The position numbers were made by a program, and so were the translations under genes. The notes under the pieces are model-generated. The model worked only from the letters and a program-made list of their open reading frames with translations, was not told the origin of the DNA and made no database searches. From the NCBI RefSeq assembly GCF_032062105.1, contig NW_026919154.1, positions 62,001 through 126,000 of the forward strand: a stretch of DNA of 64,000 nucleotides, in the 5' to 3' direction. Shown piece by piece: positions 346 to 53,163 of the stretch (positions are counted from its first letter, which is position 1; each line of letters opens with the position of its first letter). This DNA comes from Saccostrea cucullata (taxonomy: Eukaryota).

Positions 346-779
346 TCAGTGTCCTTGGTGATAAAGCAAAAGCAAAATTGAAACTCATTAGAAATGGACA
401 GTAGTTAAGGCCAACAATAAAAAATGACTTGTTTGACGCACTCCGACTTACCTGTCAACATCACCTCTACCAAATCATTTTTTAGTACTTTGATTTTTAT
501 AAATTTTGTTAGTTTCCATAGACATAGACATTGTTTAATTTTAAAGACATATAAATGTTCAATAATCATTTTTACGGCAATAAAAATTAAATTTTTTTTG
601 TCAGGTGTATAATGAAAATACCAAGTTTCTGGTTTCTGTGAAAAAAAAAAATTTCAGATAGCAATTAAGAAAATCCATCACATTTTTACCTACCTACCTT
701 GCAAAATCAAACAAACAAAAATATGATAGCACGAACAATCACAAAATTGACATTAATACAGAAGAAAATTAAGCATAAT

Positions 780-797
780 CATTCATGTTACAGATAT
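780..797 (+). promoter_or_regulatory. Putative splice acceptor of a 5'UTR intron, copy A (AG at 792-793)
   Basis: ttacag|ATAT ~35 nt before the ATG. The same YAG|ATAT junction occurs in C (~12817), D (22651) and E (41151). Confidence 0.6.
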
Positions 798-828
798 ACG
801 TGTTTTGATTCTATCATAATATACCGGG

Positions 829-2862
829 ATGGATCATATTCCTCGGCTATCAGAGTCTGTGTATGTGGGACTATGTCGTAAACTAGGGAGTCCTACAGAA
901 GTGAGGATCAGGAGAGAAGTGATGGATACTCTGGAGGTTGTAAACAAACCTTTATACATCATGAGGGGTCTTGATAGAATACAGAGCGGGAGTAGACGTG
1001 AGGGATTCAGACTGAGGACTTCAGATGATGATTGGATGTTCTGGCTTCCGGACCACAAAGTTATATGTGATCTCTCTCAGATCAGTCTCTACCGTATCCA
1101 AGAAAACACTATGATTTTGATGAATTGTAATAATCTTCCACCGGGTTTTACCAGACTTTACCTAATGAGTCCATCAAATAATGTACAAACCGTTTTCTCC
1201 TGTGTAGTATTAAATTACAGTGTATTCATTTCAAGTGCATTATTCAGAAATAACCATTTGATTTACACTAAGATGAACACAATCTCTTCTGCTTTCCCTC
1301 ATGGACCTTGTTGTACATTTTCCGTAAGCAAGGGAATAGAAACTGACCAGGCGTTTTGTTTCCAGTCACATCACTGGCCTACGTCAGCACTGCCATGGAT
1401 ACAGAGATGTCGACAACAGGGTTGGCCAGCCCAGAATGTTGTATCGGAAATATTAAGCGGAGGATTTCATGTGGTTCCTATCGGAAGCACTCCTGATAAT
1501 GGACTAGAATGGAGAATATCTTTCTCAATAGCAGAACAAAAACTTATTTATTCAATGAATCACTGTCAGTTTTTGTGTTATGGTCTTCTTAAAATATTTC
1601 TCAAAGAAGTAATTAATTGTCAGACCAGTACACAAATTATTTGTTCATACTTCCTGAAAACTATTCTATTTTGGACTATACATAAGAATACTTCTTTGAT
1701 TTGGACACCTGATAACTTATTGTCTTGTTTCTGGATATGCTTTAAATTATTGATAAATAATGTACGTACTGGGGAATGTCCAAACTTTTTTATTCCACAA
1801 AACAACATGTTTAGAGTGAAAGTCACTGGTTCTGCGCAAACCTCACTGTTCAGTCAGTTGTATGATTTGTACGGTAAGGGGATATCCTGTTTACTCTTGA
1901 GTGAAACAATCAGACCTTACCTCTGTAGGGCTATATTAAACAGAACATTCAGAGTCTGTACAGACGAGAGCAGTATTGCATCTAGCACCTATTTAGATGC
2001 TGTCTTATTTAGTGAATTACCCTTATTTAATCTATGCATTGAGCGTATTGAGGAATTTGTAGTTTACATAAAACAAATAGAGAAAATGATTAAGGAAGGA
2101 TTGTCATCGTATCAACCAGTCATTTTACAAAGTATCACATCAAATGTGTTACGGAACGCTGCTTTGTATGTGCAAAAAAACATATGTCAAAATGAAAATT
2201 CTAGTAAGGTTTTCTATCAAGCTAAAAGGGGATTTAAGATGCTAAAACAGTCGTGTAAGTTCGGCTGTGTGTCTGATATCCTTTATCTTGCTATGTACTT
2301 CTACAGAACACGTAGATATGAAGATTCACTCAGTTGTTTACATAAAGCAACGGAAAGAATGTCAATGCCATATATAATGTATTTGGGTCATGTCAGACAA
2401 CATTTGTACCTATATTGCCTAGAAAGGGATACCCTGGGTAGTAAGATGAGGAGAGCTCTAGTGAGGGATATCATGCTACAATTTAAGTACACTTACATTG
2501 ATGAACTATCGTTAGAGCAGGGGATCAATAAGAAGAATGAATTTTTGTCATTAAAGATCCCACCTTTTGTGATGTTACACATGTTGTTTATACTGAATCA
2601 CCACAAACTTGGTAACACAGTCAGGTCACAACAATCTCTACAGGATCTACAGACTCTGCTGCTCTATGATGACGGGGTTTATGTACCTCATGTCTTTAGA
2701 GATATTTCGTGGCAGATATTGGGCATATGTCAACAAATCTGTGGAGACTTTTCGGGATCTCTCCGGTCTTATCAATATGCCTTACAACAAGAACCAGTAT
2801 TTCACAAGATCCAGGAAGCAACACTGTTACGTATAGAGAACCTTTCTGATAGGATGTTGTAA
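829..2862 (+). CDS. Mab-21/cGAS-like receptor (cGLR) nucleotidyltransferase with C-terminal TPR-like helical region, intact copy A (677 aa)
   Basis: Uninterrupted ORF. NTase motif SGSRREG-x5-SDDD, third acidic residue in ETDQAFCF. Mab-21 motifs [47 protein letters not shown]-like [27 protein letters not shown] near the C-terminus. Confidence 0.92.
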   Translation: MDHIPRLSESVYVGLCRKLGSPTEVRIRREVMDTLEVVNKPLYIMRGLDRIQSGSRREGFRLRTSDDDWMFWLPDHKVICDLSQISLYRIQENTMILMNCNNLPPGFTRLYLMSPSNNVQTVFSCVVLNYSVFISSALFRNNHLIYTKMNTISSAFPHGPCCTFSVSKGIETDQAFCFQSHHWPTSALPWIQRCRQQGWPAQNVVSEILSGGFHVVPIGSTPDNGLEWRISFSIAEQKLIYSMNHCQFLCYGLLKIFLKEVINCQTSTQIICSYFLKTILFWTIHKNTSLIWTPDNLLSCFWICFKLLINNVRTGECPNFFIPQNNMFRVKVTGSAQTSLFSQLYDLYGKGISCLLLSETIRPYLCRAILNRTFRVCTDESSIASSTYLDAVLFSELPLFNLCIERIEEFVVYIKQIEKMIKEGLSSYQPVILQSITSNVLRNAALYVQKNICQNENSSKVFYQAKRGFKMLKQSCKFGCVSDILYLAMYFYRTRRYEDSLSCLHKATERMSMPYIMYLGHVRQHLYLYCLERDTLGSKMRRALVRDIMLQFKYTYIDELSLEQGINKKNEFLSLKIPPFVMLHMLFILNHHKLGNTVRSQQSLQDLQTLLLYDDGVYVPHVFRDISWQILGICQQICGDFSGSLRSYQYALQQEPVFHKIQEATLLRIENLSDRML

Positions 2863-3533
2863 TTTTTTTTTACATTCAACATTGCATAATGTTTTTCTAA
2901 CCTAATTTTTGTAAAGGACACTGTAATTTTTTTTTCATAACTTTTTCAACCAGTTATATTATTTTACATTATTTTGTAACACTTGCATATTTTACTTTAT
3001 ATTTAGTGTTTCATCACTTATATTGTAAGTTATTTCATACTACTTAGTTTTCCTGATTTTTTTGTATTAATGCAAATATTAATTTGTTTTATGATATAGT
3101 ACGCTGTATACTCATACTGATTCAATGTCCGATCTTTCCCTTGTATTCCATTGTTTAGACATCTATTGAGAAAGCAAAATGTCATTTGTTCAATTATTTA
3201 AAATTAAAGTAAATTTCTAATTCACTACGTATTTCTCTCATTGTTTTTATATTATAGTTACCTTCTTCATTGACATTAACATGTAAATAGCATGGAAAGT
3301 CTCGTATATGATAAGTTTTAATTTCAAAAACGATATTCTAGATAAAAAATGATATTACAACCTATAATATACAATACGTGGTAGTGTTATGCAATTTTTA
3401 ATCTGGCCATGCTAAAAGAGTACGCTGTAATTCTTTCAGTTGTTGGATAATTATTTTTTATTTATTTGTTGAAGGTAAGGGCCGATTTGGCGGTTTTTGA
3501 TAGGTGATAATGGTTAACATAATTAGAATAATA

Positions 3534-3740
3534 CCGTATAAGCAGAATTTTTAGCGAGGATGCATTATAAGCGAGGGTGCTAAAATTGAGTATCGCTAAA
3601 AATTAATTGCACTTTATTTGTAATACATTCTTTAATGTTCATTTCAAAATTGCTAAAATAGCATCTCGCTAGAAATATATCACCAGTTTTTAAGGACAAA
3701 TCGCTAAATTTGTGTCTCGCTAAAATTTCCACTTATACGG
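3534..3740. mobile_element. TA-flanked MITE (Tc1/mariner-type)
   Basis: TIRs ccgtataag...cttatacgg with TA on both sides; internal tttagcga/tcgctaaa repeats. Confidence 0.8.
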
Positions 3741-4548
3741 TATACAAAGAAATATGTAAATAATTAGATATTGTGAGAGTAAAAGGATGATCGGACTGCA
3801 ATTTCCTCAACCAAATATGACACTATACAGTTTAAATATATCATTCATATGAGAAAGTCACCATGATTCCAGTTCCCCAAGAGCAAACTTATTGCGTGGG
3901 AATAATTTGATACCTTGTGGTGGGAGTAATTTGACACCACTAAGTGTTTGTTTGCTGATCAGAGCGAACTTGAATTTTGTAATAAAATAAAATGCAAGAC
4001 AAATATGAGGGATTTGTGTAAATGCTTAATTGCTTACAAGAAAATTATTCGAAAATTTTAACAATCATTATAACTGTATGCGGCCATGGACTAACTAAAC
4101 GTTTTCTATTACAAATCTTAAAATTTGCTGTAAACACCTTCCCTGCAATCACGCATTTTAACGCATATACCATTGCCCCGCAGTCACCTATATGCCTGTG
4201 CCCCTTAATTTAAACGTCTTTTACCTTTTTTGGCTTGTCAATGAATTCTATGAGAAGTAATGCATTTAGGCGATTAAAAGAAGGAACAGTCCTCTTCGTT
4301 TCTCGTGCATAGGGGCAGAGAGATGGGAGAGAGGGTTAAACATTTTCGTACATTTAAGTAGGAGGGCTGTTTGGAAATTATTGACACATACTGTTTATCC
4401 TCCTTTTTCTCTAATGAACACACAGAGACACAAAAATTTTAAACATCAGTTACAAAACAATTTTAAACAAAATGAAAAAAAAAAATTCCAAAAGAAAAAA
4501 CTAAATGAAAAAAAAAATAAAACAAAATAAAATGATAAAGAAAAAAAA

Positions 4549-4582
<34 letters not shown>

Positions 4583-4758
4583 AAGAGCGGGTACGCTAAG
4601 TGTCTCACTTTGATTCTAATATATTAGTGACACAGATCGTTTTTTCATTCCTCTTAAATAGGTTAAAAAATAAACATTGTTTAAAATGATATAACAAAAA
4701 CTGGTATTAAGGGATTTCCGTTATATAATTACACATTGAAATTCAGCGAATTTGTACA

Positions 4759-5695
4759 CTATCAGAAGCAGTGTAAATAGGATTCTGTCACAAAATAGAG
4801 AGTCAGACGGAAGAAAGGGTCAGAAGAGAAGTGATAAACATTAACGGGGTAACGGATAAACCTGTTTCCGTTATGAGAGGTTTTGACAGAATGAATATAG
4901 TGGGAGTAGGCATGAGGCATTCAGACTGAGTACTTCTGATATATGGTTTACACATTCTGGTTTCCAAACCACAAATGATATAAGAGGATTCCTATGTCAC
5001 TCTCTATCGTACAACAAACGACACCGTGATTTTGATGTGGTGTCATTATTTACCAATGGGATTTACAAGATTAAATCTGATGAGTTTATCAAATGAGGCA
5101 AAAATCAGTTCCTCCTATGTACATGTAGTAATGAATAGCAAAGTATATACTTTAGATACTTTATTCAGAAATAAACATTTTTAATTCTTAAAATTCCTCC
5201 ATTTTTTTACATCAAGACTGTCGTTCCTCATGGACCATATGCTACTTATATTTACCGTATTCCAAGGTTCAGAGACTGAACTTATGTTCTATTTCCCATC
5301 TGACTTGTGGATACAGAGAAGTCGTAAACAGAACCATCCAACTCAGAATGTTGTTTCAGACACATGCATATTAAGAGGAGGTTTACATGTTGTTCCTATC
5401 AGAAGCACATCTTAAAATGAATTAGAAAGGAGAATCTCATTCTCTCAAGCAGAAATAAAATCTCATTTACTCAATGAATCACTGTCATTTTTTTGTGTTA
5501 TGGTCTCTTCAATTTTGTGTTTTTGAAGTAATTAACTATCAGACCAATACAACAATTCTCTGCTCATATTTCTTAAAAACATTCGTATTTTGGTTTATTC
5601 AAACTAATACGTCATTGTCTTGGAACCTGATTACTTATAATTAAGGACTTGTGTATGGGAAAACTTTAGATCATTCATATACATAGTTTACATAG
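4759..5695 (+). pseudogene. cGLR paralogue B, heavily degraded 5' half
   Basis: Alignable to copy A by eye (ctatcagaagcagtg; ttcagactgagtacttctgat; cctcatggacc; ggaggtttacatgttgttcctatc; atgaatcactgtca). Many stops and frameshifts; homology ends at ~5695. Confidence 0.85.
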
Positions 5696-6460
5696 CAAGG
5701 CAAGTCTACATTGTGTCGATTTAGAGCCCGACTGAATAATAACGAAACACAGGACTGATCTGGCTCTGCTCCTATTTTGTATTGCTTTATGGACTTTGAG
5801 ATTGAATACTGTTGCCGATTATTTTAAATGAACAGCGATGTTATATATTCATTGTGCTGTTATATGCTTCTCATTGGAAAGTTCATTCATGCACTTATTG
5901 TTTGTTAGGTAATCTTAAGAATAAATATCACTGACTCGATATTTGAATATGTAAATATGTTCATATTTTTAATCAGGGGATAAAACTTAAGCTTCTTCCT
6001 GACATCCTCATATTCATATTGTCAAGGGCACTAATGATCCAATAACCTCATATACTTGTTATATATTTGTATTAGTATTGGTAAAATGCCCAATCTTATA
6101 TCTCTCAGGTAGTTTCCACAAACTGCCAAAGTCACGCTTCTTCAGATTTCTCCACTAGAATTTTTTTTAACTCTTGAACTAAAGATTAGTCACAATTGTA
6201 TGAAGTGATTTACGGATGGGGGGTATACATTTGATTGTTGTGTATTACTGTTCAGCCAATCAGATTATCAAATCAGATTATCCAGCTAACCAATGAAAAA
6301 GTGAATGATATCATAATGGAAATGACGTTTTAATGAAAATAATTGTGTGTAGAGATTTATAGAAAACTTAACATAAATTTTGACTAAACATGGAAGACAT
6401 GTTTGATGCATTTTTTTTAAACAAAGAAACATACAGCATTGACCAATGTCACGGATAAAT

Positions 6461-6622
6461 AGAGGATATTCAATGTTTTATAGTTGAATATGGAATTTAA
6501 TTCACGAGTAGGACAGGATTTTTTTTTTATATTTTCACGAGTGCGAAGCAAGAGTAAAAAAAAAATTCCTGTCTCACGAGTGAAATAAATTCTATATTCA
6601 AGTACAAAATATTTAATGTTCT
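6461..6622. repeat. Long imperfect palindrome with GCGAAGC apex
   Basis: Arms ttgaatatggaatttaattcacgagt..gacagga / tcctgtctcacgagtgaaataaattctatattcaa; GCGAAGC at 6543-6549. Confidence 0.75.
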
Positions 6623-6849
6623 GTTGTTTTTTTTTTTACATTTTAAAATTTTTTTCCTTTTTTTTTCCTTTGCCTCTGTCTTTTTTGTAATACAGTGATA
6701 GGCAACATGACGTCATAGTTGAGCGCTTGAGACGTCATAGGTAAGTGAGGTGGTAAACATGGATTTAGTAACATATTTTGGTAATTTTGGCAGTTTTATT
6801 ATCTGTCAGAATGGTTTTCTGTATTTATTTCTGTTTATCATATCAGGTC

Positions 6850-7122
6850 GCCCCGTGGGGATCGGGGTTAGATAAAGCCCTCAATACCCCCTTGCTTGTC
6901 GTACAAGGCGACTAAATGGGGCGGTCCTTCGGATGAGACCGTATAAACCGAGGCCCCGTGTCACAGCAGGTGTGGAACGATAAATATCCCTCCCTGCATG
7001 CTCAAAGGCCGTAAGTGCCGAGCATAGGCCTAAATTTGCAGCCCTTCACCGGCAATGTTTACGTCTCCATATCGGTGAAATATTTTGGAGTGGGACGTTA
7101 AACAGTATACAATTAATCAATC
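6850..7122 (+). mobile_element. Young ~270-bp SINE-like retroposon, copy 1
   Basis: Near-identical to copies at 19738, 29312(-) and 63785; (CAAT)-type tail; TSD ATATCAGGTC at 6840-6849 and 7125-7134. Confidence 0.88.
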
Positions 7123-7627
7123 TTATATCAGGTCAAGGAAGATTATTTTTACAACACTCTCCGTTATGGGAAGAAAAAATCGAGAGTTTTACCGCACTTC
7201 TGATATTTGTCACACTGTTAAAGGATATCATTTTGATACCCTTTCACACTGTGACAGAATATCATTTTTATTCAATGAATAAATAACAGAATTTTACCGG
7301 TAAAAATTATCACGTGACATTAAACTTCATATTTCCCTGTCAACGACATAATTTTCATCATATTCCACCTCTTCGGAAACCTACTGCATTTTCCCCATAA
7401 ATGTTATCGTTCGTTGAACGAGAACTCCTGAGAGTAGTTGACGTCACAATAGCCTATTTTTGTCACAGGGTTTCAATGCAACTTTACGTTAAAAATTAAG
7501 ATGAATTTGAGAGCGATATCGAATTTAAAAGTTTATGTTTATTAAAAATTTTTGCTTGTTTCGGTATAATAAACAATTCATTGCATGAATGTTCAGGAAA
7601 CATGAAGATTTATTCAACCAAGAAATA

Positions 7628-8700
7628 CGAGGGGTTATCAAAAAGTTCGTGGACTAGCGCCATAAAATTAAAACCGCTTTAGTTACATCAGTGAATTTTG
7701 AAATATCTATTCACTAGTATTCAGCATCTCTTTTTCTTTCTAAAGAATAAACCATGAATCATAAATTTTTATTTTCAATTAATTAGTAATGTTTTTGTAA
7801 GTAATGGTATGTCCAGTCGGCGCAACATCCAAAACGACGTTTTTGAGACCTATATGTGACTAAGAAAAACTCTTTTGATATGATCATTTGACATCCAAAA
7901 ATCCCATTAATTCAGGTGTGTGTTCGGACACAATTGTTCCATAAGATTTTTACTTCATTCTGGAAGTTCTATGAATTTTTTTTCGTAAATTTTACATGAA
8001 ATTTCCAAACAAATAAGGCCTTGAAAATGACGTCAAAAGGGGGGAGGAGTTTCCTTTTTCAACATTTTATAAGGTTCTGTCCCTGAAAAAACTGGTATAG
8101 ACCTAAGAAATGTTTAAACTGGCTACAAAGAAATAGTATTCATTCAGAGCACCTGTCTTTTAATGTCAAAATAGATTCGGAGAGAAAAGGAATGTACAGT
8201 TAATGTCGATTTGTAGTCAAGGTATGAAAAAATCAATCAGGTCAAAAAATTACGTTGATCATGTGTTATTGATATTGAACTCCAAAACGCAAAATATGCT
8301 GGCACAATCAAGCGATGATCTCTCCCAATGTATATACATGTATTCATTTGGAATATTATATTCATTGAAAGCCGCTGTTCATGACATTGTAAAGTCATAT
8401 AAGCAAGGCGGGTTTTTGTTCCAACTCAGCTCCAGGGAATCTCATCAAAATAAGTGTATGAGGTAGTAGAAGCGGACATTGAAAACCAATGACGTAGTAT
8501 GACGTCATGAAACTAAACAGCGACAGCGCCGGGTGATCATATAATGTCGTTTCTATTTTATAATAATTTGGAAAGTAATGAACGTATCCAACTAAAGTTT
8601 TCAACATTTCTTTATTTTTTGTTGTTTTATGTTCCATATAAAATTTAAAAGAACAGATTACATAGGTTCAATTTTATAGCATCAGTCCACGAACTTTTTG
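7628..8700. mobile_element. Non-autonomous mariner-like element, right TIR truncated
   Basis: TA|cgaggggttatcaaaaagttcgtggact at left; agtccacgaactttttg at 8684-8700. Confidence 0.7.
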
Positions 8701-8949
8701 TATAGTGGTTCATCTTAACTCAGTTGTTTTTTTTAAATTAAAATTAGAAGTGATGTCACTCGCAAATCCTTGACTTGGGAAAAGTGTAAAGTTGTGTGTT
8801 TTTCTACCTGTTTTTTTCCCTACCTGTCTGATTGATGCTGTATTTTTTACCGAGGTGTAGTTACATAGTTATGTAGAAAAAATTGACTTTACCTAGGGTT
8901 CCAAAATTATCAAGAGACTTTTGAGAAAACTTTCTAAATCATGATTTAG

Positions 8950-10500
8950 TTTGGCAATATTCATGTATCTGAAGTATCTAATGATTTGATAAAAAAAGAA
9001 GCATTCCTTTTAATCCATGATGCATATTTATAGACAATGTCAAAAGTATATCCATACGTGTGTGAGTTCTGCAGTGCGTTTACATCTTTAATAAACACAA
9101 AGAGTAAATCTACCAATATTGTGTATTTTTCATGTTGTAAACTTTGTTTTCCGGAATGTACTGAAAGGAAAAAGAAACGCAGGGTAGCATAATTTTCGAT
9201 AAAAAAATGACGACATGACCGAAAATTACGAAAATTGGTCAGAAGGGAAATTTAGTTACTGTGCATCAAAATCAGTATCCAGAATTACTCAACCGTAAAA
9301 TTTATGACGTCACGTAGGGAAAACGCCAAAAAGCCCAAAACACGTGCATTTTGATAACGACGAGTTTGTCAACAAATCTTGTTGCATTATTTGATGCATA
9401 TGAGGTATGCACAACGTTTTTCAATATTAAGAGACATTATGAATTGTTTACAATCTTGGCACAGTTTACGGAAGTTCAAGAGGGTCTTGTTTTCGAATTG
9501 CCTAATTAATGAAAAAGGCAACAACGGTTTACTAAGCAGTCTCTTGTAAATGTTCCCCCATAAAACGTTTTAGCCGTTGTCAAAGAGGGTCTGGAGTGGT
9601 TTTCAATCAACCGTGACGATGACGGTAACGCGAAACAGAGTCATGTTACGAGCGGGTTATTCGTCCTGCCATCTCTTAAATCGCCACCTTACTATCACAA
9701 AAACAGCTATTTATAGAGTAGATGATTATAATCATTACATTAATACGAAATTTGAAAGAAAATAATTCTGCAATTTGGTTTTTTGAGCCAGTCAACTTAC
9801 GGTTGTATTCCTCTCACTGGCGCTTGCGCGCGCCGCTTGACTTATTTTTTGCATGGTTACCAATGCTAAATTTAGCCAGGATTTGAAAGATAAACACTCT
9901 GATGATATTCCGTGCAAAGGAGAAATAAGACTCTGACAAATGCACGAGATAGACATTGAAGATAATGAGAGTTTTCGATTTTCACTTTTGGGGGGTATCG
10001 TCATTTGAGCTTCAATAACTTATGAATAATTAGACAAAATCATATGAGAATTTGGTTATATCTTTTTGGAAGATGATTTTAAAAGGTAGATAGGAAAACT
10101 AAAAAGTATTTTAAGAAAAACAAATTTAATTCACCTCAAAAGTTTACCCTGCGTTTCTTTTTCCTTTCAGTATATTTTGCCACGCTCTGAATAAAACACA
10201 AAGAAAATTCGCAAGTACGAAAACCCATTAGTGCAGACCTATTTGTAAAAGCAAACCTTTCTACATAAAGGATATGTGAAATATAACAATAAAACCTCGA
10301 AATGCGAATAATAAATACAAAACCTCTACACATTAAAAGACTACAATTAATTAAATTTTAATACTGAGAATCCATGGAGGGACATCAGCGCTATAATAAG
10401 TTTTAGATACTTTATTCTATACTTTTAATCTAACATGCTTATTCCATTGAAATAAATTATTACCTTTTTATTCTTGTTTTAATTCTAACTGCCAAATCAA
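8950..10500. mobile_element. Degenerate foldback/TIR element, ends uncertain
   Basis: Inverted match tactgaaaggaaaaagaaacgcagggta (~9159-9187) / taccctgcgtttctttttcctttcagta (~10145-10172), with weaker outer symmetry. Confidence 0.4.
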
Positions 10501-11790
10501 TATTTATATTTAAAATTTCTCATTTTAATAATTAATTACTTTAAATATTGTTTATTTTAATGACTTGCAGAAAACGCCAATTCCCCAACTCTAATGAATC
10601 TATAAAAATTCAGTATAAAATGCTGCAGAAAATAAATTGTGTAGACTCGTAAGCATTTGAACAAGGACTAATCTACCACCACTGGCTTCCAACAACTTTT
10701 TCACACCTGGGAGTAATTTGACACCACTTTAGAACAAACTAGTTAAAAATCAATATTACCTAATCAAAGACAAATATACAGCAAAGAGAGGGGGGTAATA
10801 ATCGACCGAGTTATTGTAGTAAATTCTAAAAACCCAGGCCCTGTTTCACGGTGAACATGTTGGCATGATAAAGTTCCCCAACTGCTCAGTGACCGTAGTT
10901 AAGGTCAGAATTTGAACCCTTTTACAGTAAACTGTTCTCAAATAGGACGGGAATCAATCTTTATATGTTTTAAGGAGCGTTAGAAACTTCGATCCTTAGA
11001 CATCTCTCAACTCTCCATTGGATAAAATGTATGTATTAATTGTAATTTACAATTTACGCCAACATTTAACAGGAAGGATATATCATAGGATGTGGGATAT
11101 TGTGGAGATCACATTATCCGGATTGTAATCAAAAATTGAAACTTGCTGTTAAGAAACTTCCGATTTCTGTATTTTCAAATAAAATTTCCTTTTTGTGAGT
11201 TTTGTGATAATTCATGCGACACACAAAAGTGAATCAGGAAAAGACGACTTTAAGTGAATCTATATTTAAAAAATCTGAGAAAAATGAAAGTACATGTCTC
11301 TTATCATGGTGTCTGCTTTTACACTGATAAGCCCACTGTTATATTCATCTACAGTAAAAGGTCCTATGATAATTTAATGATGCGTGTAAATGCACGTATA
11401 CGTTTTTAATAATAGTATGTAAAATGTATATAAATCAGTATAAAGATTTTAAAGTATTTTGTAAATAATTTCTTTTTTTGGTTTTTTAGATTCTCTTTAT
11501 CTCAGTTGTCCCCCTATGCATCCTAAAATACAATTTCTTGTTTAAATGTCATTAAAAGATAGTTGAAATAAATGATAGTACATGTATTATGCTTCAGCTA
11601 AAGTAAAATAATTATTTTTCTGTAGTTTGCACACTTCACGTCCAACATAGTTATACCCCGGAATATAGTTTACACCTATCTATTGGCTATGAGGACAATG
11701 GAAGGTTCATTCGCCTTTATCGTAATGGAACGTGTTTATCTTTTAAAAATTGCCTAAAATACACATATAGAGGCGCAAATTTTCAGAAGT

Positions 11791-11846
11791 GGGAAATTTG
11801 CTAACAGTGAATTATAAATATCTGCATGTGAAGGAAGTTTTTCAGT
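11791..11846 (+). promoter_or_regulatory. Candidate Pol II core promoter (kB-like site, TATA, Inr) ~1 kb upstream of copy C
   Basis: GGGAAATTTG at 11791-11800; TATAAAT at 11813; TCAGT Inr with A at 11844, 31 nt after the first T of the TATA box. Confidence 0.3.
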
Positions 11847-36119: not shown

Positions 36120-36930
36120 AATAGAAGAGTTTCTATTCATTAATATTCGTTACTTACCTTTATGGGGAGAAGGTTTACTATATGGTAGTCTTATGTGGTA
36201 CATATATCCGGAGTTGGGTGTATAAAGTTATCTTCGGGAGACATTTAACTCAGAGTGAATGCTACTATAATTATAGTTATCTAAAAGATTTTAGGATAGA
36301 AAATGTTAATTTTCGAACGTGTTATCAAATATCAATGGTTATTTCTAGTCATATGTCTAATCGATATATCACAGTAAACTTGAATAAAAATACAAGGTCA
36401 AGTTTGTATATATATGTTACATCTACTTGGTTAGATTAAGGAATGGTTAATACTTAATAAAATATTATGATACACGCTGACCATTTTTTTTCTCTCTCTT
36501 CAGCTTCCCTTATTTATGTAGAATTATATCACACAGGTTTAACTTTCCACACGATGGAAGAGTTTCTTTATATTAATATTCGAAGGGGATTTACTTAACT
36601 CTATCGGGAGAAGATCTACTATATGGTAGTCCTCTGAGGATATATGAGGGAGATGGGGTGTATAGAGATATTTTTGGTAGAACTTTATCTCTAAGTGAAT
36701 GTTACTTTAATTATACTTTTCATCTAAAAGATTTTTAGGAAAGGACATGTTAATTTTAAGACGTAATATCAATTATCAATTATTGTTTCCATTTATATGT
36801 CATATCGATATATCTTAGTACACTTGAATAAAAATACAAACCCAAGATTGACATATATGTCATATCTACTTTGTTAGTTGTAGTCGCAGATTATAATAAA
36901 TAAACACATTATGATACACAACTTTTCCTC
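36120..36930 (+). repeat. Diverged tandem duplication, period ~430 bp
   Basis: gaagagtttct, tactatatggtagtc, cttgaataaaaatacaa and catatctactt-like motifs each occur twice, ~430 bp apart. Confidence 0.8.
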
Positions 36931-37100
36931 TCGTTAACAATCCTTATTTATGTTGTATTATATAATTTTCTCTGCTAGGAGTCCTATCTTTCCAAATTTT
37001 TCCAATTTCTAAACATGCATTATCTACCTTTATTAAAGAATAAATGTCTTTATCTTCCATTGCATGAATATAATGGAACTACAATTTTTAAAGAAATTTA

Positions 37101-38113
37101 CGCTCAGCTATGTTAAGGACCGATATGGAAAATGTGACCTTTGCACCGTTTTAATATGTATTGCTTCTTTTAAAAAATTTTAACAAAGCAACTAAATACT
37201 TGTAGAAAAGGTAACATAGCTATCAATAATGGATAGGACTGGGCCGTAGTTATTACCAGTTATATCGCACGTATCAGCTGTTTGTCACGTGACTTGTATA
37301 AAAATAGAATTGTTAAGCTGAATGTAGGAAATGTGGATAGTGCAGGGGCATACGCTTGTTTTTCAAGAAAATAATTGATACACATTAAAAGAGGTTTATA
37401 TCCTCTACCCAAAAAGTGCTGGGAGCTAGTCAGTGCAGTTTGCGAAGTACTTAAAATTTTACCGAAAATGCTTATAATAGCTAAAAATTTCCACTTCGCT
37501 TAAATTCTGTTATAAATAAAATTAATGTTATGTAGACCAGGATCAGCTCCCAGCACTTTTCAAAATATACACTATATGAGCAATAAATATTCCAAATTTC
37601 AAAATAGTTTATGCCCTTGCACTTTTGATGTATATAACGAATACGCTCATCGTTTTAGCGATATTCTCTATATTCCTTATCCCTGTGCAGCTTCAATGCT
37701 ACTAGATAAATTCATATTCTATACACATTGTATTAAATAAATTATTTTCTTTTAGTTTTAATGATTAGGTCTGAAAATAAGCAATGGAATCAAATTTATT
37801 TAAGCATTCTTGTAATTATCAAACCAGTGAATTTGCTCCTCTGGATCACTTGTGCTGCGTCAAGTCAAGGCTGATGACGTCATATTTGACAAAAGGCTTT
37901 CTTCTATTACTCGACTGTATCGCTAGCAAGTATTGCAATTTTACAAGATTTTATGAATAATCGATAAAATAGATAAATTCAAGTTGTTATTTACGCATGA
38001 TCATGTCGTTAATTAATTTTTGTAGCTTGTTAAATTTCAATGACGTCACAATTAAACTTCCAATACGATGTACAAGGAATGTGAACTCTGACCTTCCTTA
38101 ACATAGCCGAGCG
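37101..38113. mobile_element. ~1.0-kb non-autonomous TIR element
   Basis: cgctcagctatgttaagga / tccttaacatagccgagcg; empty site aagaaatttatgcatatgg at ~21332. Confidence 0.85.
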
Positions 38114-39714
38114 CATATGGCATTAAGCTTAAAAAAAGGTAATGTAGTTTAAGAATGAAAAAAAAAGTCGAATGTTCATTGGTGTATGCTTGTATTTTTA
38201 TGGTAAAATTTTCATGAAATAAAACATGTTCTTTTATTCATCTTTTAAACTACAACTTATACAGATGTTATAAGAAATTTATTGATTTTTCAAAACAGCA
38301 GAGCATTTTTATTATGTTACTTCGTTTTATACAGAGAACTCAATAATCTAGACAAATAGAAAATAGTTCTGGACATAAACTCGGAAATCCCTGTGATAAA
38401 AGAACAAATTATTAATTAAGATACCTTTTTTTTTTAGTTTTTACTTGTGATTTAAACTTAGGGAAGCTATCTGCTTTTTCTTGTTTGTGATTTGAATTAG
38501 TATGGCGAAATTTTTATTCGAATATTATATTGAAATACGATAAACATACGCTGCAAGGCACAATAATTCCTTATTTGAACTTCAATTTTATCTTTAGTTT
38601 TTTTTTATTAAAAAAAAAATACTAAAAGTATTTCTCTATTCAGAGGTTAATAATAGATTTAAATGACACGGCGTTTTCCATATCTGGGTCTTTTGAGTCT
38701 AATTTTAAATTAGGTTTTCTCGATACACAGGTAATATTATCTACGTTATAAGACATCGATTTTATCCTGTTACTTACAACAGTGTTTTGATTTTCAGAAA
38801 TAGAGTACAGGTAATGGTGTGCACAATACAAACCGAAAGTTAAATAAAGGTAAGATATTTTTTTCGTTTAAAGGAAATATTTTGTCGGGTCATTTAGAAA
38901 ACAAGGTACCGAATGGTGGTGTTTTATAACACATTGTCAAGAGATTCGAATCTATTAATTTACGGATCAACAATAAAAGTGTTTCACCATTTTAGTGCAT
39001 GTATCCCTTAGAAGCATATCTTAACTTTCCACCTAAACCTCTGCATACGAACTTTTGATTATTTTGTCAACTGATAATATAGAACATATTGTTTTGTTAA
39101 TCAACAGATCGAGAATTTTTTTAAAGTGTGGGCAAGATGACGTCAATCAAAGAACACAAGTTTTCGTAATATTGGCATTAAGAGATGTTTTTGAACTCTA
39201 GAAAATGAAAAGAACCATGTAAACATGGTCAAAAATAAAATATTTTAATTCTGTAATGCTGTATCTGTCATTTTGATTAAAATCTACCACCGTTGACGTC
39301 ATATATGTATATCATGCAACTTGGGAATTGATCATGTCGTGTAAATAGAATTGGCATGTACAAAGATACGTAAAATGGAGTTAAAGATTAACATCGTGAA
39401 TACTATGTGACATTTATATGGAGTTCAGTTTATCAAACAGGTATGCTAATTTATTTTCCTCGACTTTATTCTCTTTTGAAGACAGTCAGATATAAACGTA
39501 CCCTGGTCGGCCTTTCCTCTGTCATTCATGAAAAAAATAATGCAACAGAACAACAAACAGCTTGATATTTTAAAAAACATGAGATTAGTACAGATTGAAA
39601 GTGTACCTTCTAAAATACTTGGAAAGTGCTGTTAGAATCCGAGTTAAGCATGGCTTTACGAAAAATCTCGGTTCATATGTATAAAATTCGATACAATGAC
39701 CTTGTCAGAAAAAA

Positions 39715-39976
39715 CAATTTGTCATTGAGTCAAATGCTGACTGACGTTTTTCATACCAATTGTTAGTCCATTATTTATACACTGAATTGACGACGGATTT
39801 CTTCCGTTATTTCCTGATCATGACAACGAGCACACGGCGGGTGTGACCGGTCGGTAGGGGATGCTCACTCCTCCATGGCACCTGATCCCACCTCTGATGT
39901 TTCGGAGGTCCGTGTTTGCTCTGCTCTGGTTTTGTATATTGTTTAATGGACTTTGAGATTGAATACTGTTCGTTAA
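39715..39976 (+). repeat. Interspersed repeat (retroposon-like)
   Basis: ggtgtgaccggtcggtaggggatgctcactcctccatggcacctgatccc; the segment atggactttgagattgaatactgtt also occurs at ~5788-5812. Confidence 0.5.
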
Positions 39977-41137
39977 CTCCATATACTACTTTATTCAAAA
40001 CATCGGGTAAGATTACGTGCAAATGTGACAAGACAGTGGGATTCTAGCAGCACTTTTTATTCAAAATGGGCATACTATAAAGGAGAAAAACACATATTTT
40101 GGCAACTGTGGGTCCTAATCGTTACCATGGCAACCGCAATGTCATTTTCTCTACATAATTAAATACCTTACAATTTGACCTTTCAGAAAATATGTAGGTT
40201 GCCTTATGTAAAAGTAACTAGAAAATGTCTAAATTTCTATCCGATAGTTTTTTGTCTATTTTCCAGAAAAAGGCAAAATCTCTGCTAGTCAAATGGTTAA
40301 CATAACCACGGGGGAGGGGGTTGAAAGATTTCCAGAGGAGGTGGGTTGAAGGGGAAAGGATTATTATTACGTACGTTTTACACACACACATGTAGTTTAA
40401 TGACTCAATAGGATACAGGTTTTATAAGGTTGGATGTTGGTCAAGCTGGGAAAAGGTACTTTAATGGATTACGTACTGAAAGGTTTTGAAAAAGAAAGGA
40501 AAATAAATTTCAGAACCCGAAAATCCATTTTTTATAAAAGGGATGAATTTCATTTTGGTTTTGCAACCGAATTTCTTTACATAATATAGCATTAGCCTTT
40601 CACTGCTCATTTTCTAAAGTAAAAACACAACCAAGATATGGAAAATTCTTCTATCTTTTTCGTTTCTGAAAATCTGAAGGGGGTTGCAACCCCGTAACCC
40701 CCCGCTGGATCTGCCAATGATGTAAAAATAACTTTTTAATACCGAATTTCTGAGTATTGCGTGTAGATCTTGTATACTTTTCATCTAAATGAGTCCATGT
40801 CGTACGAATATATTTTAAATAACTGCACAAGTGCCTAATATCATTTTCATTTTTAGATCCGCTTGGTATTTTATTTCAGAACTATCAAAGGTTAAAGAAT
40901 ACTATTTTAGAAAAATCTTGCCTAAATTCTATTAAAAATACATGTATAGAAATGCTTATGCATCAAAGCTCGTATATTCGTGTATGTCACAAAGCTCTCC
41001 TTAGATGATATTTAATTTAGCGAGACCTTGAAGAGGATGAAAACAAATATTTCAAAGTGCCACTAACAGCATTCAGAGGCAATATACGCTTTCTATTTGT
41101 TGACAAAACACAATAGAACAGGGAATTAGTGAAAAGT

Positions 41138-41155
41138 CATTTGTTTTTCAGATAT
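41138..41155 (+). promoter_or_regulatory. Putative splice acceptor, copy E
   Basis: catttgtttttcag|atat, identical to copy D, 36 nt upstream of the ATG. Confidence 0.7.
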
Positions 41156-41187
41156 CTACTTTTTCATCCCTTCATAATTTTGTGGGA

Positions 41188-43215
41188 ATGAATCATATAC
41201 CTCGGCTGTCAGAGGCTGTGTATGCAGGACTGTGTCGTGAAGTAGGGAGTCCTACAGAAGTGAAGTTCAGGAGAGAATTGTTGGACACTGAGGATGTGGT
41301 GAACAAACCTTTGTTTATTATAAGGGGATTTGAGAGAATGAAAAGTGGAAGTAAGCGTGAGGGATTCAGACTGAGAACTTCAGACACTGATTGGATGTTC
41401 TGGCCACCGGACCACAAGGTGATATGTGATATCTCTCAGATAAACCTCTATCGTATCCCACAACACATCGTGATTCTGATGGAGTGTGATGACCTACCAC
41501 CGGGATTTACCAGACTTAACCTAATTAGTCAATCAAATAAAGCAAGAATCAATTCTTCCTGTGTAGTAATGAATAACAATGTATACATATTAAGTACATT
41601 ATTCAGAGATAACCATTTGCATTTCTTAAATACCTCCAATATTCCTATTACTAGTGCTATCCCTCATGGACCTTGTTCTACCTATTCTGAATTCCAGGAT
41701 ACAGAGGATGACCTTGCGTTCTGTTTCCAGTCTCATCACTGGCCTACGTCAGCACTACCATGGATACAAAGATGTTATAAACGGGGATGGCCAGACCGGG
41801 ATGTTGTCTTTGACATATTGAGCGGAGGATTTCATGTTGTTCCGATCGGAAGCACTCCTGAAAATGAACAAGAATGGAGAATCTCATTCTCACGAGGTGA
41901 ACAAAAACTTGTTTATGCAATGAATCACTGTCAGTTTTTGTGTTATGGTCTTTTCAAATTTTTTCTGAAAGAAGTAATTAATTGTCAGACCAATGAAAGT
42001 ATTCTCTGCTCATATTTCATAAAAACTACTATACTGTGGGTCATACAGACCAATAGTTCCTTGTCTTGGACACCTGATAACTTATTGAACTGTTTCTGGA
42101 CATGTTTTAAATTAACGATATACATGGTACGTACTGGGTATTGTCCAAACTTTTTTATTCCAAAAAACAACATGTTTAGATCGAAAGTCACTGGTTCTGT
42201 ACAAACGTCATTGTTCAATCAGTTGTATGATTTTTATTGTAATGGAATATCTTGTCTACTTTTAAGTGACACAATTAGACCCTACCTCAGTATTGCTATA
42301 TTAAACAGAACATTGAGAATCTGTACAGACGAGATCAGTATTATATCCAGCACCGAGTTAGATAAACGCTTATACAAAGAATTACATTTACTATATCAAG
42401 GAGTAATAAGTATTGAGGATTTAGCAGTTTATATGAACCAAGTACAAATCATGATTAAGAAAAGACTTACACCGTATGAAACAGTTTCTTTACAATGTAT
42501 CACATCAAATATGCTAAGAGAAACTGCCATGTTTTTACAGACTAGACTTAATCAAAGTGAAACTCGCAATAAGGCTCTCTACGAAGTTAATAAAGGATAT
42601 ATTTTGCTTAAACAGTCGTGTAAGTTTGGATTTTTATCTGACATTATGTATCTTGCTATGTACTTCTACAGAACACGTAGATATGAAAACTCACTCAGTT
42701 ATTTAAATAAAGCACAGGAGGGAATGTCATTGCCGTATGTCATGTATAGGGATCATGTTAATGTTGATATGTATAGACACTACATGGAAAAGAGTACCCT
42801 GGGTACTAAGATGAGAAGAGCTGTAATGAGAAATATTATGCTTTGTTTTTTATACATTTATATTGATGAACTAGTGTTAGAACAGGAGATCAGTAAGAAG
42901 CATGGTATGTGTGCATTATTTATCCCACCTCTAGTGATGTTAAACATGTTGTTAATACTGAATCACCACAGACTGGGTCACACAGTGACGTCACAACAAT
43001 CTATACGTGATCTACAGACTCTCCTGCTCTATGATGACGGAGTTTATGTACCTTATCTCTTCAGAGACATTTCGTGGCAATTACTGGGAATCTGTCAACA
43101 AATCTGTGGAGACTATTCGGGATCTCTTCGGTCTTATCAATATTCCTCACAACAAAAACCATTTCACAAGATTCAGGAAGCAACATTGTTCAGAAAAAAC
43201 ACTCTTCCAATGTGA
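41188..43215 (+). CDS. Mab-21/cGAS-like receptor (cGLR) with C-terminal TPR-like region, intact copy E (675 aa from the ATG)
   Basis: The ORF track starts at GTG 41182, but the ATG aligned with the paralogues is at 41188. Motifs SGSKREG-x5-SDTD, EDDLAFCF, GFHVVPIG, EWRISFS, CSYFIKT, CPNFFIP and TPR-like ISWQLLGICQQICGDYSGSLRSYQ. Confidence 0.92.
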   Translation: MNHIPRLSEAVYAGLCREVGSPTEVKFRRELLDTEDVVNKPLFIIRGFERMKSGSKREGFRLRTSDTDWMFWPPDHKVICDISQINLYRIPQHIVILMECDDLPPGFTRLNLISQSNKARINSSCVVMNNNVYILSTLFRDNHLHFLNTSNIPITSAIPHGPCSTYSEFQDTEDDLAFCFQSHHWPTSALPWIQRCYKRGWPDRDVVFDILSGGFHVVPIGSTPENEQEWRISFSRGEQKLVYAMNHCQFLCYGLFKFFLKEVINCQTNESILCSYFIKTTILWVIQTNSSLSWTPDNLLNCFWTCFKLTIYMVRTGYCPNFFIPKNNMFRSKVTGSVQTSLFNQLYDFYCNGISCLLLSDTIRPYLSIAILNRTLRICTDEISIISSTELDKRLYKELHLLYQGVISIEDLAVYMNQVQIMIKKRLTPYETVSLQCITSNMLRETAMFLQTRLNQSETRNKALYEVNKGYILLKQSCKFGFLSDIMYLAMYFYRTRRYENSLSYLNKAQEGMSLPYVMYRDHVNVDMYRHYMEKSTLGTKMRRAVMRNIMLCFLYIYIDELVLEQEISKKHGMCALFIPPLVMLNMLLILNHHRLGHTVTSQQSIRDLQTLLLYDDGVYVPYLFRDISWQLLGICQQICGDYSGSLRSYQYSSQQKPFHKIQEATLFRKNTLPM

Positions 43216-53080: not shown

Positions 53081-53086
53081 TATATT

Positions 53087-53089
53087 ATA

Positions 53090-53124
<35 letters not shown>
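53087..53124. repeat. (TTA)n microsatellite
   Basis: Direct reading. Confidence 0.9.
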
Positions 53125-53125
<1 letters not shown>

Positions 53126-53163
53126 CATTGCATATCTTAATGTAGGTCGCGGGTTTGCTTTTG

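What the first reader, a model, noticed from the sequence alone, without database searches (positions are those of the whole stretch)
829..43215. Tandem array of five cGAS-like receptor genes in birth-and-death evolution: candidate uncharacterised innate-immune locus
Seen: five co-oriented paralogues over 42 kb; two intact, one recently disabled, one TE-shredded and one heavily eroded. Established: the GS/DxD/D signature with Mab-21 motifs defines the cGAS/cGLR family, which makes cyclic dinucleotide signals for STING, and bivalves are known to have expanded cGLR repertoires, so the family itself is not new. Inference: this ~675-aa subfamily behaves like a rapidly turning-over pattern-recognition cluster, comparable to NLR arrays. 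Its ligand and product cannot be read from sequence. This is the best candidate system in the window.
Basis: partly seen in the sequence, partly recalled or inferred. Interest (0 to 1): 0.8.

Follow-up and report, generated by a model that had tools for sequence, protein, structure and literature searches.

The report
Oyster cGAS-like receptor gene array
This stretch of hooded-oyster (Saccostrea cucullata) DNA holds five same-direction copies of a cGAS-like immune sensor gene fused to a TPR-like tail, two intact and three decayed; it is one ordinary piece of a very large oyster gene family that is already catalogued but whose trigger and product are still unknown.

Summary
A and E are intact. 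D has one stop, five frame changes and a deletion. C is split by repeat insertions. B is an eroded N-terminal half.

The genome is Saccostrea cucullata. The array runs beyond the window: at least ten copies or fragments, four of them intact, on a 154-kb TE-rich contig. The genome holds at least 66 near-full-length copies.

The N-terminal 360 residues fold like cGAS (Z 27). G54, S55, D66, D68, D173 and the nucleotide-contact residues are kept in 44-45 of 45 intact paralogues. The C-terminal half is a TPR-like solenoid found only in this family. STING exons are present in the genome.

Selection is purifying overall (omega 0.43; 0.25 in the helical lobe, about 0.5 in linker and TPR), with no region above 1.

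The family is not new. Li et al. 2023 list cGLR-TPR fusions and cloned two C. virginica members (Table S3, entries 98 and 99); neither is marked active. Expression could not be tested.

Verdict: a real but ordinary new member of a known kind, biochemically an orphan. The scan noted a similar array elsewhere in this genome (s1-703790).

The parts
779..828 (+). Conserved 5' leader of gene A. It has a pyrimidine run and CAG (791-793) that read as a splice acceptor. Similarity between paralogues begins here.
   Evidence: blastn of A with flanks against the contig: matches to D, E, F and G start at 744-779. Alignment A2 shows an invariant CAG|ATAT in A, D, E, F and G. Positions.
829..2862 (+). Gene A: intact single-exon ORF of 677 aa, a cGLR (Mab-21) core plus a TPR-like C-terminal half.
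   Evidence: Mab-21_C 2e-15, Mab-21 3.3e-9; AlphaFold2 pLDDT 92, pTM 0.89; mouse cGAS Z 27.4, rmsd 3.2, 307 residues aligned.
829..1863 (+). Residues 1-345 of A: the cGAS-like nucleotidyltransferase core and helical lobe. Catalytic codons are G54-S55 (988-993), D66-D67-D68 (1024-1032) and D173 (1345-1347).
   Evidence: Model residues 10-363 align to mouse cGAS 149-507. G54, S55, D66 and D68 are invariant and D173 is at least 90% kept in 48 oyster proteins; they are kept in 44-45 of 45 S. cucullata paralogues. HMMER aligns D173 with the third catalytic Asp column of cGAS and Sp-cGLR1.
1864..2859 (+). Residues 346-677 of A: a helical linker (346-478) and a TPR-like alpha-solenoid (479-677) with two short strand pairs.
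   Evidence: Separate model with pLDDT 91. All top structural matches are TPR proteins at Z 10-12.4. Foldseek best E is 2.6e-3. Pfam TPR_2 scores 19.5 bits, below its cut-off. The module is found only in this family and its fragments.
4759..5679 (+). Pseudogene B: an eroded N-terminal half (residues 7-309), with 9 stops against A. It is cut off at a high-copy repeat.
   Evidence: Its best references belong to another Saccostrea subclade (P0007, P0015). Very high contig depth at 5601-6000.
12844..13998 (+). Pseudogene C, 5' part (residues 1 to about 373). The start codon and upstream acceptor-like TAG|ATAT are kept; there are many frame changes and stops.
13999..17887 (.). A 3.9-kb insertion splitting C: nested non-coding dispersed repeats (a 925-bp unit at 15114-16036 and a 1.3-kb unit at 16587-17886), with no ORF over 76 aa.
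   Evidence: Own-genome DNA search: dozens of scored copies at 86-91% identity and 9632 first-look candidates. Repeats and ORFs.
17888..19324 (+). Pseudogene C, 3' part (residues about 374-675). It is interrupted again at 18083-18582 by a 0.5-kb insert carrying an inverted repeat with 83-nt arms.
22690..24666 (+). Pseudogene D: full length, closest to E (72% aa identity). It has a stop at 22828-22830 (codon 47), five frame changes and a deletion of about 19 codons.
   Evidence: dN/dS against E is 0.47, the same as between intact copies.
41188..43215 (+). Gene E: intact single-exon ORF of 675 aa with the same architecture. Its acceptor CAG is at 41149-41151.
30849..32280 (+). Context: LTR-retrotransposon remnant between D and E (aspartyl protease and reverse transcriptase ORF fragments).
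   Evidence: Pfam RVP 1.7e-4; RVT_1 1.2e-28.
52943..55283 (-). Context: reverse-transcriptase ORFs of a retroelement between E and the next family member, which lies beyond the window.
   Evidence: Pfam RVT_1 1.8e-24 and 1.5e-9.

Best explanation
The locus is a segment of a tandem, co-oriented array of oyster-specific cGAS-like receptor (cGLR) genes in Saccostrea cucullata. Each gene has its whole coding sequence in one exon behind a short leader with a conserved splice acceptor. Each encodes about 675 aa: a cGAS-fold nucleotidyltransferase core followed by a helical linker and a family-specific TPR-like solenoid.

Shown here: the array and its decay states, the fold, the conserved catalytic and nucleotide-contact residues, purifying selection on 45 intact paralogues, genus-specific expansions, and STING ligand-binding-domain exons in the same genome.

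Inferred: the intact copies (A and E here) are cytosolic sensors. On binding a still unknown ligand, probably with help from the linker and TPR half, they would make a nucleotide second messenger read by one of the oyster's several STING proteins. The array grows by unequal crossing-over and loses members to frameshifts and TE insertions, which is birth-and-death evolution.
For: Five copies at the stated places; ten units on the contig, all on the + strand. At least 66 near-full-length single-ORF copies genome-wide, 17 of them with one or two stops. Pfam Mab-21 and Mab-21_C above cut-off. AlphaFold2 pLDDT 92. cGAS matches at Z 25-27 over about 300 residues, and Cv-cGLR1 at Z 26. G54, S55, D68 and D173 kept in 45 of 45 paralogues and D66 in 44 of 45. 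R229, S231, S233, E236, S273, Y274 and K277 kept in 44-45 of 45; they sit in the WR.SFS..E and SY..K blocks that HMMER aligns to cGAS. Overall omega is 0.43, and 305 of 673 sites are significantly constrained. Paralogue similarity is confined to the CDS plus about 50 nt with a conserved CAG acceptor. STING_LBD exons above cut-off at 6 or more loci. Family members are in the curated cGLR set of Li et al. 2023 (PMC9980059, Table S3 entries 98 and 99).
Against: No enzymatic or expression evidence exists for these genes. The two C. virginica members cloned by Li et al. have an empty Note column, so they are not among the 15 active enzymes found with no ligand, dsDNA or poly I:C. The published motif is matched only loosely: S53 stands where Q or T is expected, residue 67 is not hydrophobic in A, and D68 to D173 is 104 residues against the stated 50-90. 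The N-terminal half of the NTase domain is not detected by sequence profiles. Read data gave only contigs 90-95% alike, from paralogues or other individuals, and no verdict on transcription. The TPR assignment rests on middling Z scores.
Confidence: 0.65

Rival explanations
1. The proteins keep the cGAS fold but do not signal through cyclic dinucleotides. They could act as scaffolds or regulators through the TPR half, as Mab21L1 and MID49/51 use the fold without cGAS-type catalysis. Or they could carry out a different nucleotidyl-transfer reaction, such as linear oligonucleotides or protein nucleotidylation.
For: Two family members were cloned and are not flagged active in the only published screen. 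The active-site regex is met only loosely. About half of the protein is a protein-interaction-type repeat. MB21D2 and Mab21L1 are also among the sequence and fold matches.
Against: Near-total conservation of the metal-binding triad, the GS loop and the nucleotide-contact residues across 45 paralogues and 48 proteins from several oyster genera is hard to explain without catalysis. The best fold matches are active cGAS and cGLR1 enzymes. Most cGLRs in that screen were silent for lack of the right ligand, so a negative result there is weak.
Confidence: 0.25
2. The copies are cargo of, or amplified by, a mobile element: a selfish or retroposed gene family rather than a host receptor array.
For: Single coding exon. 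2123 first-look candidates in the genome. The contig is packed with LTR, LINE and non-autonomous repeats.
Against: Similarity between copies stops at the CDS ends and at a conserved splice acceptor, which shows an upstream intron. No terminal repeats or shared flanks were found. All ten units on the contig point the same way, as tandem duplication predicts. There is purifying selection on all domains. The tree shows clades shared between genera.
Confidence: 0.04
3. The pseudogenes or the multiplicity are assembly artefacts: uncollapsed haplotypes or indel errors.
For: The assembly is fragmented (23,869 contigs, 1.17 Gb). Two paralogue pairs on different contigs are 99.7-99.8% identical, which looks like haplotigs.
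Against: Copies in the window differ by about 22% in DNA. C carries kilobase insertions of dispersed repeats. B lacks half the gene. A, E, F, G and about 49 other copies are open over 2 kb, so random indel error is low. The sister species S. echinata, with a chromosome-scale assembly, also has a degraded copy next to an intact one.
Confidence: 0.03

Closest known systems
cGLR catalogue of Li et al. 2023 (PMC9980059): C. virginica LOC111100821 (XP_022288656.1) and LOC111101641 (XP_022289921.1), Table S3 entries 98 and 99; the 'cGLR-TPR' architecture of Fig. 1C
   Same: Same family and architecture. Current models of the same LOC identifiers are hits P0037 and P0045, 54% identical to A over its full length. 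The printed constructs share the SGS.REGF, D.D, EWRISFS.AEQ and [12 protein letters not shown] blocks with A.
   Different: Different genus and different paralogues. The window's genes sit in a Saccostrea-specific clade. No activity, ligand or product is reported for entries 98 and 99.
Characterised oyster cGLRs: Cv-cGLR1 (PDB 8gjw) and Cg-cGLR1, dsDNA-activated 2'3'-cUA synthases
   Same: Same fold (Z 26.1, 313 residues aligned), the same catalytic triad, and the same host group.
   Different: Only about 21% identity. Those enzymes have no TPR half. Theirs is a different branch of the cGLR tree (Table S3 entries 65 and 68 against 98 and 99).
Vertebrate cGAS
   Same: The catalytic domain superposes over model residues 10-363 (Z 27.4, rmsd 3.2 A). 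The WR.SFS..E and SY..K nucleotide-contact blocks are kept.
   Different: No zinc thumb: the query has a gap where cGAS carries its H/C-rich insertion. No disordered basic N-terminus. An extra 330-aa linker and TPR-like half. About 20% identity.
Human MB21D2 (PDB 7lt1), an orphan cGLR
   Same: cGAS-like fold (Z 25.5), a complete putative active site, and no known ligand or product.
   Different: Single-copy vertebrate gene without a TPR module; 14% identity.
CgcGAS of Qiao et al. 2021 (PMC8218723)
   Same: An oyster Mab-21 protein studied in a STING-TBK1-IRF context.
   Different: 590 aa with a Mab-21 domain and three zinc fingers, so a different protein family branch.
Tandem innate-immune receptor arrays that evolve by birth and death (own knowledge: NLR and TLR expansions in invertebrates)
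   Same: Co-oriented tandem paralogues, frequent pseudogenes, TE-rich surroundings and lineage-specific clades.
   Different: No domain shows omega above 1. Only one site (574) has a significant non-synonymous excess.

Membership tests
cGLR / cGAS-like receptors (criteria of Li et al. 2023, PMC9980059) | Active-site motif h[QT]GS-X8-20-[DE]h[DE]h-X50-90-h[DE]h | tested here: met
   G54-S55, then 10 residues, D66-x-D68, then D173. These are invariant or near-invariant in 48 oyster proteins and 44-45 of 45 S. cucullata paralogues. Literal deviations: S53 instead of Q/T, residue 67 variable, and a 104-residue spacer between D68 and D173. Li et al. nevertheless kept members of this family in their curated set.
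cGLR / cGAS-like receptors | Sequence homology across both the NTase core and the C-terminal helix bundle | tested here: met
   Pfam Mab-21 at 37.5 bits and Mab-21_C at 57.2 bits, both above the 24.1-bit cut-off. Only the second half of the NTase profile is matched. PDB profile search: Sp-cGLR1 2.5e-21 and cGAS about 1e-17.
cGLR / cGAS-like receptors | Predicted structural homology to cGAS or CD-NTase enzymes | tested here: met
   Model pLDDT 92. Foldseek E about 1e-11 with TM about 0.7 on the target. VIA-align Z 27.4, rmsd 3.2 A, 307 residues, covering model residues 10-363.
cGLR / cGAS-like receptors | Ligand-stimulated synthesis of a nucleotide second messenger | not testable with these tools
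   This needs biochemistry. In the literature, two C. virginica family members were cloned and are not flagged active with no ligand, dsDNA or poly I:C.
cGLR-STING pathway | A STING receptor encoded in the same genome | tested here: met
   PF15009 exons above cut-off at C13564, C8194, C10459, C1668, C4070, C2230 and C5634/C23783. Some of these may be haplotigs of each other.
Tetratricopeptide (TPR) repeat proteins | Sequence match to TPR profiles above threshold | tested here: not met
   TPR_2 scores 19.5 bits against a cut-off of 27, and TPR_1 13.5 against 27.8. A few paralogues carry precomputed TPR hits.
Tetratricopeptide (TPR) repeat proteins | TPR-type helical-hairpin solenoid fold | tested here: inconclusive
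   All 50 best chains are TPR or TPR-like proteins, but Z is 9-12.4, inside the range the tool calls non-specific for helical repeats. Foldseek E is at best 2.6e-3. Call it TPR-like.
Birth-and-death multigene family | Tandem paralogues with intact and decayed members and lineage-specific clades | tested here: met
Diversifying-selection receptor repertoire (NLR-like) | A sensor domain with omega above 1 or many positively selected sites | tested here: not met
   Parsimony (SLAC-like) counts on 45 intact CDS: omega 0.25-0.52 by domain, highest 30-codon window 0.76, and one site (574) significant after correction (p 1.9e-5). The method is conservative.

The most novel reading that the evidence does not exclude
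The linker and TPR-like half, found only in this oyster family and evolving about twice as fast as the enzyme's helical lobe, is the ligand sensor. The hundreds of paralogues would then form a repertoire of cGLRs that detect non-nucleic-acid cues, such as pathogen proteins or peptides, and convert them into nucleotide signals for the several oyster STINGs. That would be an NLR-like recognition logic built on a cGAS engine, and it would explain why family members were silent with dsDNA and dsRNA.
Probability: 0.25. Interest if true: 0.7.

Novelty: new member of a known kind. Interest (0 to 1): 0.33.

Why it matters
Bivalves have the largest cGLR repertoires known, and almost all of them are orphans. 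This locus shows, for one subfamily, that the enzyme's catalytic machinery is kept under purifying selection in dozens of paralogues while copies are continually lost. That argues the paralogues are working enzymes rather than relics. It also gives concrete intact genes (A and E) and natural null alleles (B, C, D) for testing what a TPR-tailed cGLR senses and makes. As a genomic finding it adds little that is new, because the family, its architecture and its radiation are already published.

Tried and rejected
1. Expression. The look-up of sequencing runs returned only low-share runs (0.10 or less of the words). Read laying on 1-6000 gave contigs 90-95% alike that tile the conserved parts of gene A and the repeats. 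These are paralogues or other individuals, so there is no verdict on transcription or on the splice acceptor. The exact-protein look-up for A is blanked for this genome. A Logan contig carrying a distant family member keeps the pyrimidine tract and AG in front of the ATG, so it is genomic DNA, not mRNA.

2. Residue-level mapping of the N-terminal NTase half onto cGAS by sequence. HMMER profiles align only from about residue 144 onward. The GS and DxD assignment therefore rests on the motif, its invariance, the predicted strand-loop-helix-strand topology and the global superposition.

3. Search for the TPR module in other architectures. Only truncated models and fragments of the same family came back.

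4. Search for other host genes on the contig by ORF plus Pfam. Only retroelement and hAT-like ORFs were found. Multi-exon genes could be missed by this approach.

5. Literature searches by LOC identifiers, and by cGLR with tetratricopeptide and bivalve terms, found no functional study of this subfamily. Table S1 of Li et al. is truncated in the held copy, so the absence of accession numbers there means nothing.

6. The TE-cargo, haplotig and retrogene-swarm readings were considered and set aside (see rivals).

Full report
**Observation.** The window has no N and about 32% G+C. The 677-aa ORF at 829-2862 (gene A) was searched against the window with tblastn. It finds five copies, all on the + strand.
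- A is the query itself.
- B is 4759-5679: residues 7-309 only, 37% identity, E 1.5e-37.
- C is in two blocks, 12844-14064 and 17888-19324.
- D is 22690-24663, with hits in frames 1, 3, 2, 1.
- E is 41188-43206, 66% identity over 674 residues.

Only A and E are open. E starts at the ATG at 41188, which aligns with the start codons of the other copies. The GTG at 41182 given by the ORF tool is two codons upstream.

**Lesions.**
- D, compared with its closest relative E, has one in-frame stop (22828-22830, codon 47), five frame changes and a deletion of about 19 codons. Its frame ends at 24666. Its dN/dS against E is 0.47, the same as between intact pairs (0.40-0.51). Most of its divergence therefore built up while it was still constrained, and it was disabled late.
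- C has at least nine frame changes and at least eight stops.
- C is also split at residue 373 by 3.9 kb (13999-17887). This insert has no ORF over 76 aa and is built from dispersed repeats. One is a 925-bp unit with dozens of scored copies at 87-91% identity and 9632 first-look candidates in the genome. Another is a 1.3-kb unit.
- A second 0.5-kb insert in C (18083-18582) carries an inverted repeat with 83-nt arms.
- B is only the N-terminal half, with nine stops. It ends at a very high-copy repeat.

**Where the window comes from, and the true size of the array.** One genome-wide hit (contig C3835, 103,014 bp) encodes a protein identical to NCBI's LOC134260584 of Saccostrea cucullata. The database lists that protein on a contig of the same length. 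The genome is therefore S. cucullata.

The window is bases 62001-126000 of a 154,454-bp contig. I fetched the rest of that contig. It carries two more fragments upstream, then two more intact genes (F, 673 aa; G, 677 aa) and a C-terminal fragment downstream. That makes ten units, all on the + strand.

The other long ORFs on the contig are LTR-retrotransposon, LINE and hAT-like genes. Genome-wide, 66 near-full-length single-ORF copies were scored out of 2123 first-look candidates. Of the 66, 49 have no stop and 17 have one or two. Two pairs on different contigs are 99.7-99.8% identical and may be haplotigs. All other pairs are below 93.5%.

**Gene structure.** Similarity between paralogues begins 50-85 nt before the ATG and ends at the stop codon. 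The shared leader contains an invariant pyrimidine run plus CAG|ATAT: 791-793 in A, 22649-22651 in D and 41149-41151 in E. C has a TAG|ATAT at the same place. I read this as a splice acceptor. Each gene would then have a non-coding first exon, one intron and the whole CDS in the last exon. A distant family member on a Logan contig also has a pyrimidine tract and AG just before its ATG. This is inferred from sequence; no RNA evidence was obtained.

**The protein: N-terminal half.**
- Pfam gives Mab-21_C (2e-15) and Mab-21 (3.3e-9, second half of the profile only), both above cut-off.
- The best PDB sequence matches are Sp-cGLR1 (8gjy), cGAS, MB21D2 and Cv-cGLR1 (8gjw).
- An AlphaFold2 model built on 48 family members has pLDDT 92 and pTM 0.89.
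- Its residues 10-363 superpose on mouse cGAS 149-507 with Z 27.4, rmsd 3.2 A and 307 aligned residues. Cv-cGLR1 gives Z 26.1 and MB21D2 gives Z 25.5.
- The model has the strand (49-53), G54-S55 loop-helix, strand (67-72, starting at D66-x-D68) and a later strand (170-176, holding D173). From my own knowledge, this order is typical of pol-beta-type nucleotidyltransferases.
- HMMER aligns D173 with the third catalytic Asp column of cGAS and Sp-cGLR1. It also aligns the blocks WR.SFS..E (R229, S231, S233, E236) and SY..K (S273, Y274, K277) with the corresponding cGAS blocks. From my own knowledge, these are nucleotide-contact residues in cGAS.
- Across 45 intact S. cucullata paralogues, G54, S55, D68, D173, S231, S233, E236 and Y274 are kept in 45 of 45. 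D66, R229, S273 and K277 are kept in 44 of 45. Residue 67 is free to vary.
- There is no zinc thumb: the query has a gap where cGAS carries its H/C-rich insertion.
- The pI is 8.6-8.8 for the whole proteins.

**The protein: C-terminal half.** Residues 346-677 were modelled alone (pLDDT 91). The result is a helical linker followed by a solenoid of helix pairs with two short strand pairs. Every one of the 50 best chains in an exhaustive structural search is a TPR or TPR-like protein (BtubC, kinesin light chain, PlcR/Rap, LGN, APC/C subunits). But Z is only 9-12.4, which the tool itself rates as non-specific for helical repeats. Foldseek gives nothing below E 2.6e-3. Pfam TPR profiles stay below cut-off. 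'TPR-like' is therefore the right term. A sequence search with this half alone finds only truncated models and fragments of the same family, so the module belongs to this family alone.

**Evolution.** In a tree of 119 family members, A, D, E, F and G fall in one starred clade of 11. The other members are five S. cucullata copies from other contigs and one S. echinata gene.
- D, E and F group together.
- G pairs with a copy on contig C3835.
- A pairs with the S. echinata gene (support 85).
- Saccostrea, C. virginica, C. gigas and O. edulis each have their own expansions.

The intact neighbours are old duplicates, with dS 0.32-0.55. The S. echinata locus also shows a degraded copy 8 kb upstream of the intact one, on the same strand.

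On 45 intact CDS I counted synonymous and non-synonymous changes by parsimony on a tree. This is a SLAC-like method and is conservative.

| Region | omega |
|---|---|
| Overall | 0.43 |
| Mab-21_C lobe | 0.25 |
| NTase core | 0.40 |
| Linker | 0.51 |
| TPR-like part | 0.52 |
| Highest 30-codon window (391-420) | 0.76 |

305 of 673 sites are significantly constrained. Only site 574, on a short strand inside the TPR-like part, has a non-synonymous excess that survives correction (p 1.9e-5). The family thus turns over: many pseudogenes, TE damage and lineage-specific clades. But the working copies are held by purifying selection, and there is no NLR-style hypervariable domain.

**Pathway context.** STING ligand-binding-domain exons score above the Pfam cut-off at six or more loci of the same genome. 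Li et al. count 225 cGLRs and 7 STINGs in C. virginica (Table S5).

**What is already known.** Li et al. 2023 (PMC9980059) curated 3,020 animal cGLRs. They report more than 200 in C. virginica and note that some cGLRs carry TPR or ankyrin modules.

Their Table S3 lists the 140 proteins cloned for the biochemical screen. Entries 98 (XP_022288656.1, LOC111100821) and 99 (XP_022289921.1, LOC111101641) are members of this very family. The printed constructs share the family's conserved blocks. Current models of the same two LOC identifiers are my hits P0037 and P0045, 54% identical to A over its full length. Those current models are not sequence-identical to the 2023 accessions.

The active oyster enzymes are entries 16, 65 and 68.

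The 'CgcGAS' of Qiao et al. 2021 is a different protein, with Mab-21 plus three zinc fingers. I found no functional paper on the TPR-tailed subfamily. Both agree with what I tested.

**Mechanism and rivals.** The best-supported reading is that A and E are working, ligand-gated nucleotidyltransferases of the cGLR type feeding STING, with an unknown ligand. The near-perfect retention of the catalytic and nucleotide-contact residues in dozens of paralogues under purifying selection is the main argument.

The chief rival is a non-cyclase role: a scaffold, or another kind of nucleotidyl transfer. It is kept alive by the negative screen result and by the loose fit to the published motif.

Three other readings are unlikely, for the reasons listed under rivals: cargo of a mobile element, an assembly artefact, and haplotigs.

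Expression, ligand, product and the role of the TPR-like half remain untested.

**Verdict.** The finding is real and correctly read in outline. It is a small sample of a large, published gene radiation, so it is a new member of a known kind and of moderate-to-low interest. Its main value is as a set of concrete test genes for an orphan cGLR subfamily.

Noticed in passing
window 15114-16036 (inside the insert in pseudogene C): A ~925-bp non-coding dispersed repeat with dozens of scored copies at 87-91% identity. The own-genome search with the whole 3.9-kb insert gave 9632 first-look candidates. Its family was not identified.
   Followed up: partly
window 14304-14330 and 17865-17891: A perfect 27-nt direct repeat ending in an A run, 3561 nt apart. 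The second copy abuts the point where pseudogene C resumes. It may be the tails of two SINE-like insertions or a duplication made at insertion.
   Followed up: no
window 18422-18589 and 16274-16433: Two long hairpin-type inverted repeats (83-nt arms, 84% complementary; 68-nt arms, 93% complementary) inside the inserts that break pseudogene C. They look MITE-like.
   Followed up: no
window 1-400, 3401-3800, 4001-4200, 5601-6000: Contig depth from public runs is hundreds to thousands of times higher here than on the genes between them, so these are very high-copy repeats flanking A and B.
   Followed up: no
contig C1291 2254-5673 (L001, - strand) and 21155-25965 (L003, + strand), upstream of the window: Long open Ty3/gypsy-type ORFs (1140 aa and 1303+310 aa, with gag knuckle, protease, RT, RNase H and integrase). 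These are apparently young LTR retrotransposons of the oyster, next to two family fragments at 7862-8263 and 11388-11847.
   Followed up: partly
codon 574 of the family (window 2548-2550 in gene A): The one site with a significant non-synonymous excess among 45 paralogues: 0.5 synonymous against 31.5 non-synonymous changes, with nine different residues. It lies on a short strand inside the TPR-like domain.
   Followed up: partly
L039 vs L041 and L050 vs L052 (contigs C16615/C12459 and C10734/C2815): Paralogue pairs 99.7-99.8% identical on different contigs. This suggests uncollapsed haplotypes in the 1.17-Gb assembly, so genome-wide copy counts are somewhat inflated.
   Followed up: no
contig C1291 61635-61833 (167-365 nt before the window's first base) vs L012 9624-9811: A 200-nt stretch upstream of gene A is 69% identical to a stretch 190-380 nt upstream of its S. 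echinata relative. Paralogues within the contig share nothing there. It may be the non-coding first exon or the promoter.
   Followed up: no
window 62286-62657 (- strand): ORF with a weak zf-RVT match (E 0.004): another retroelement remnant near the window's end.
   Followed up: no
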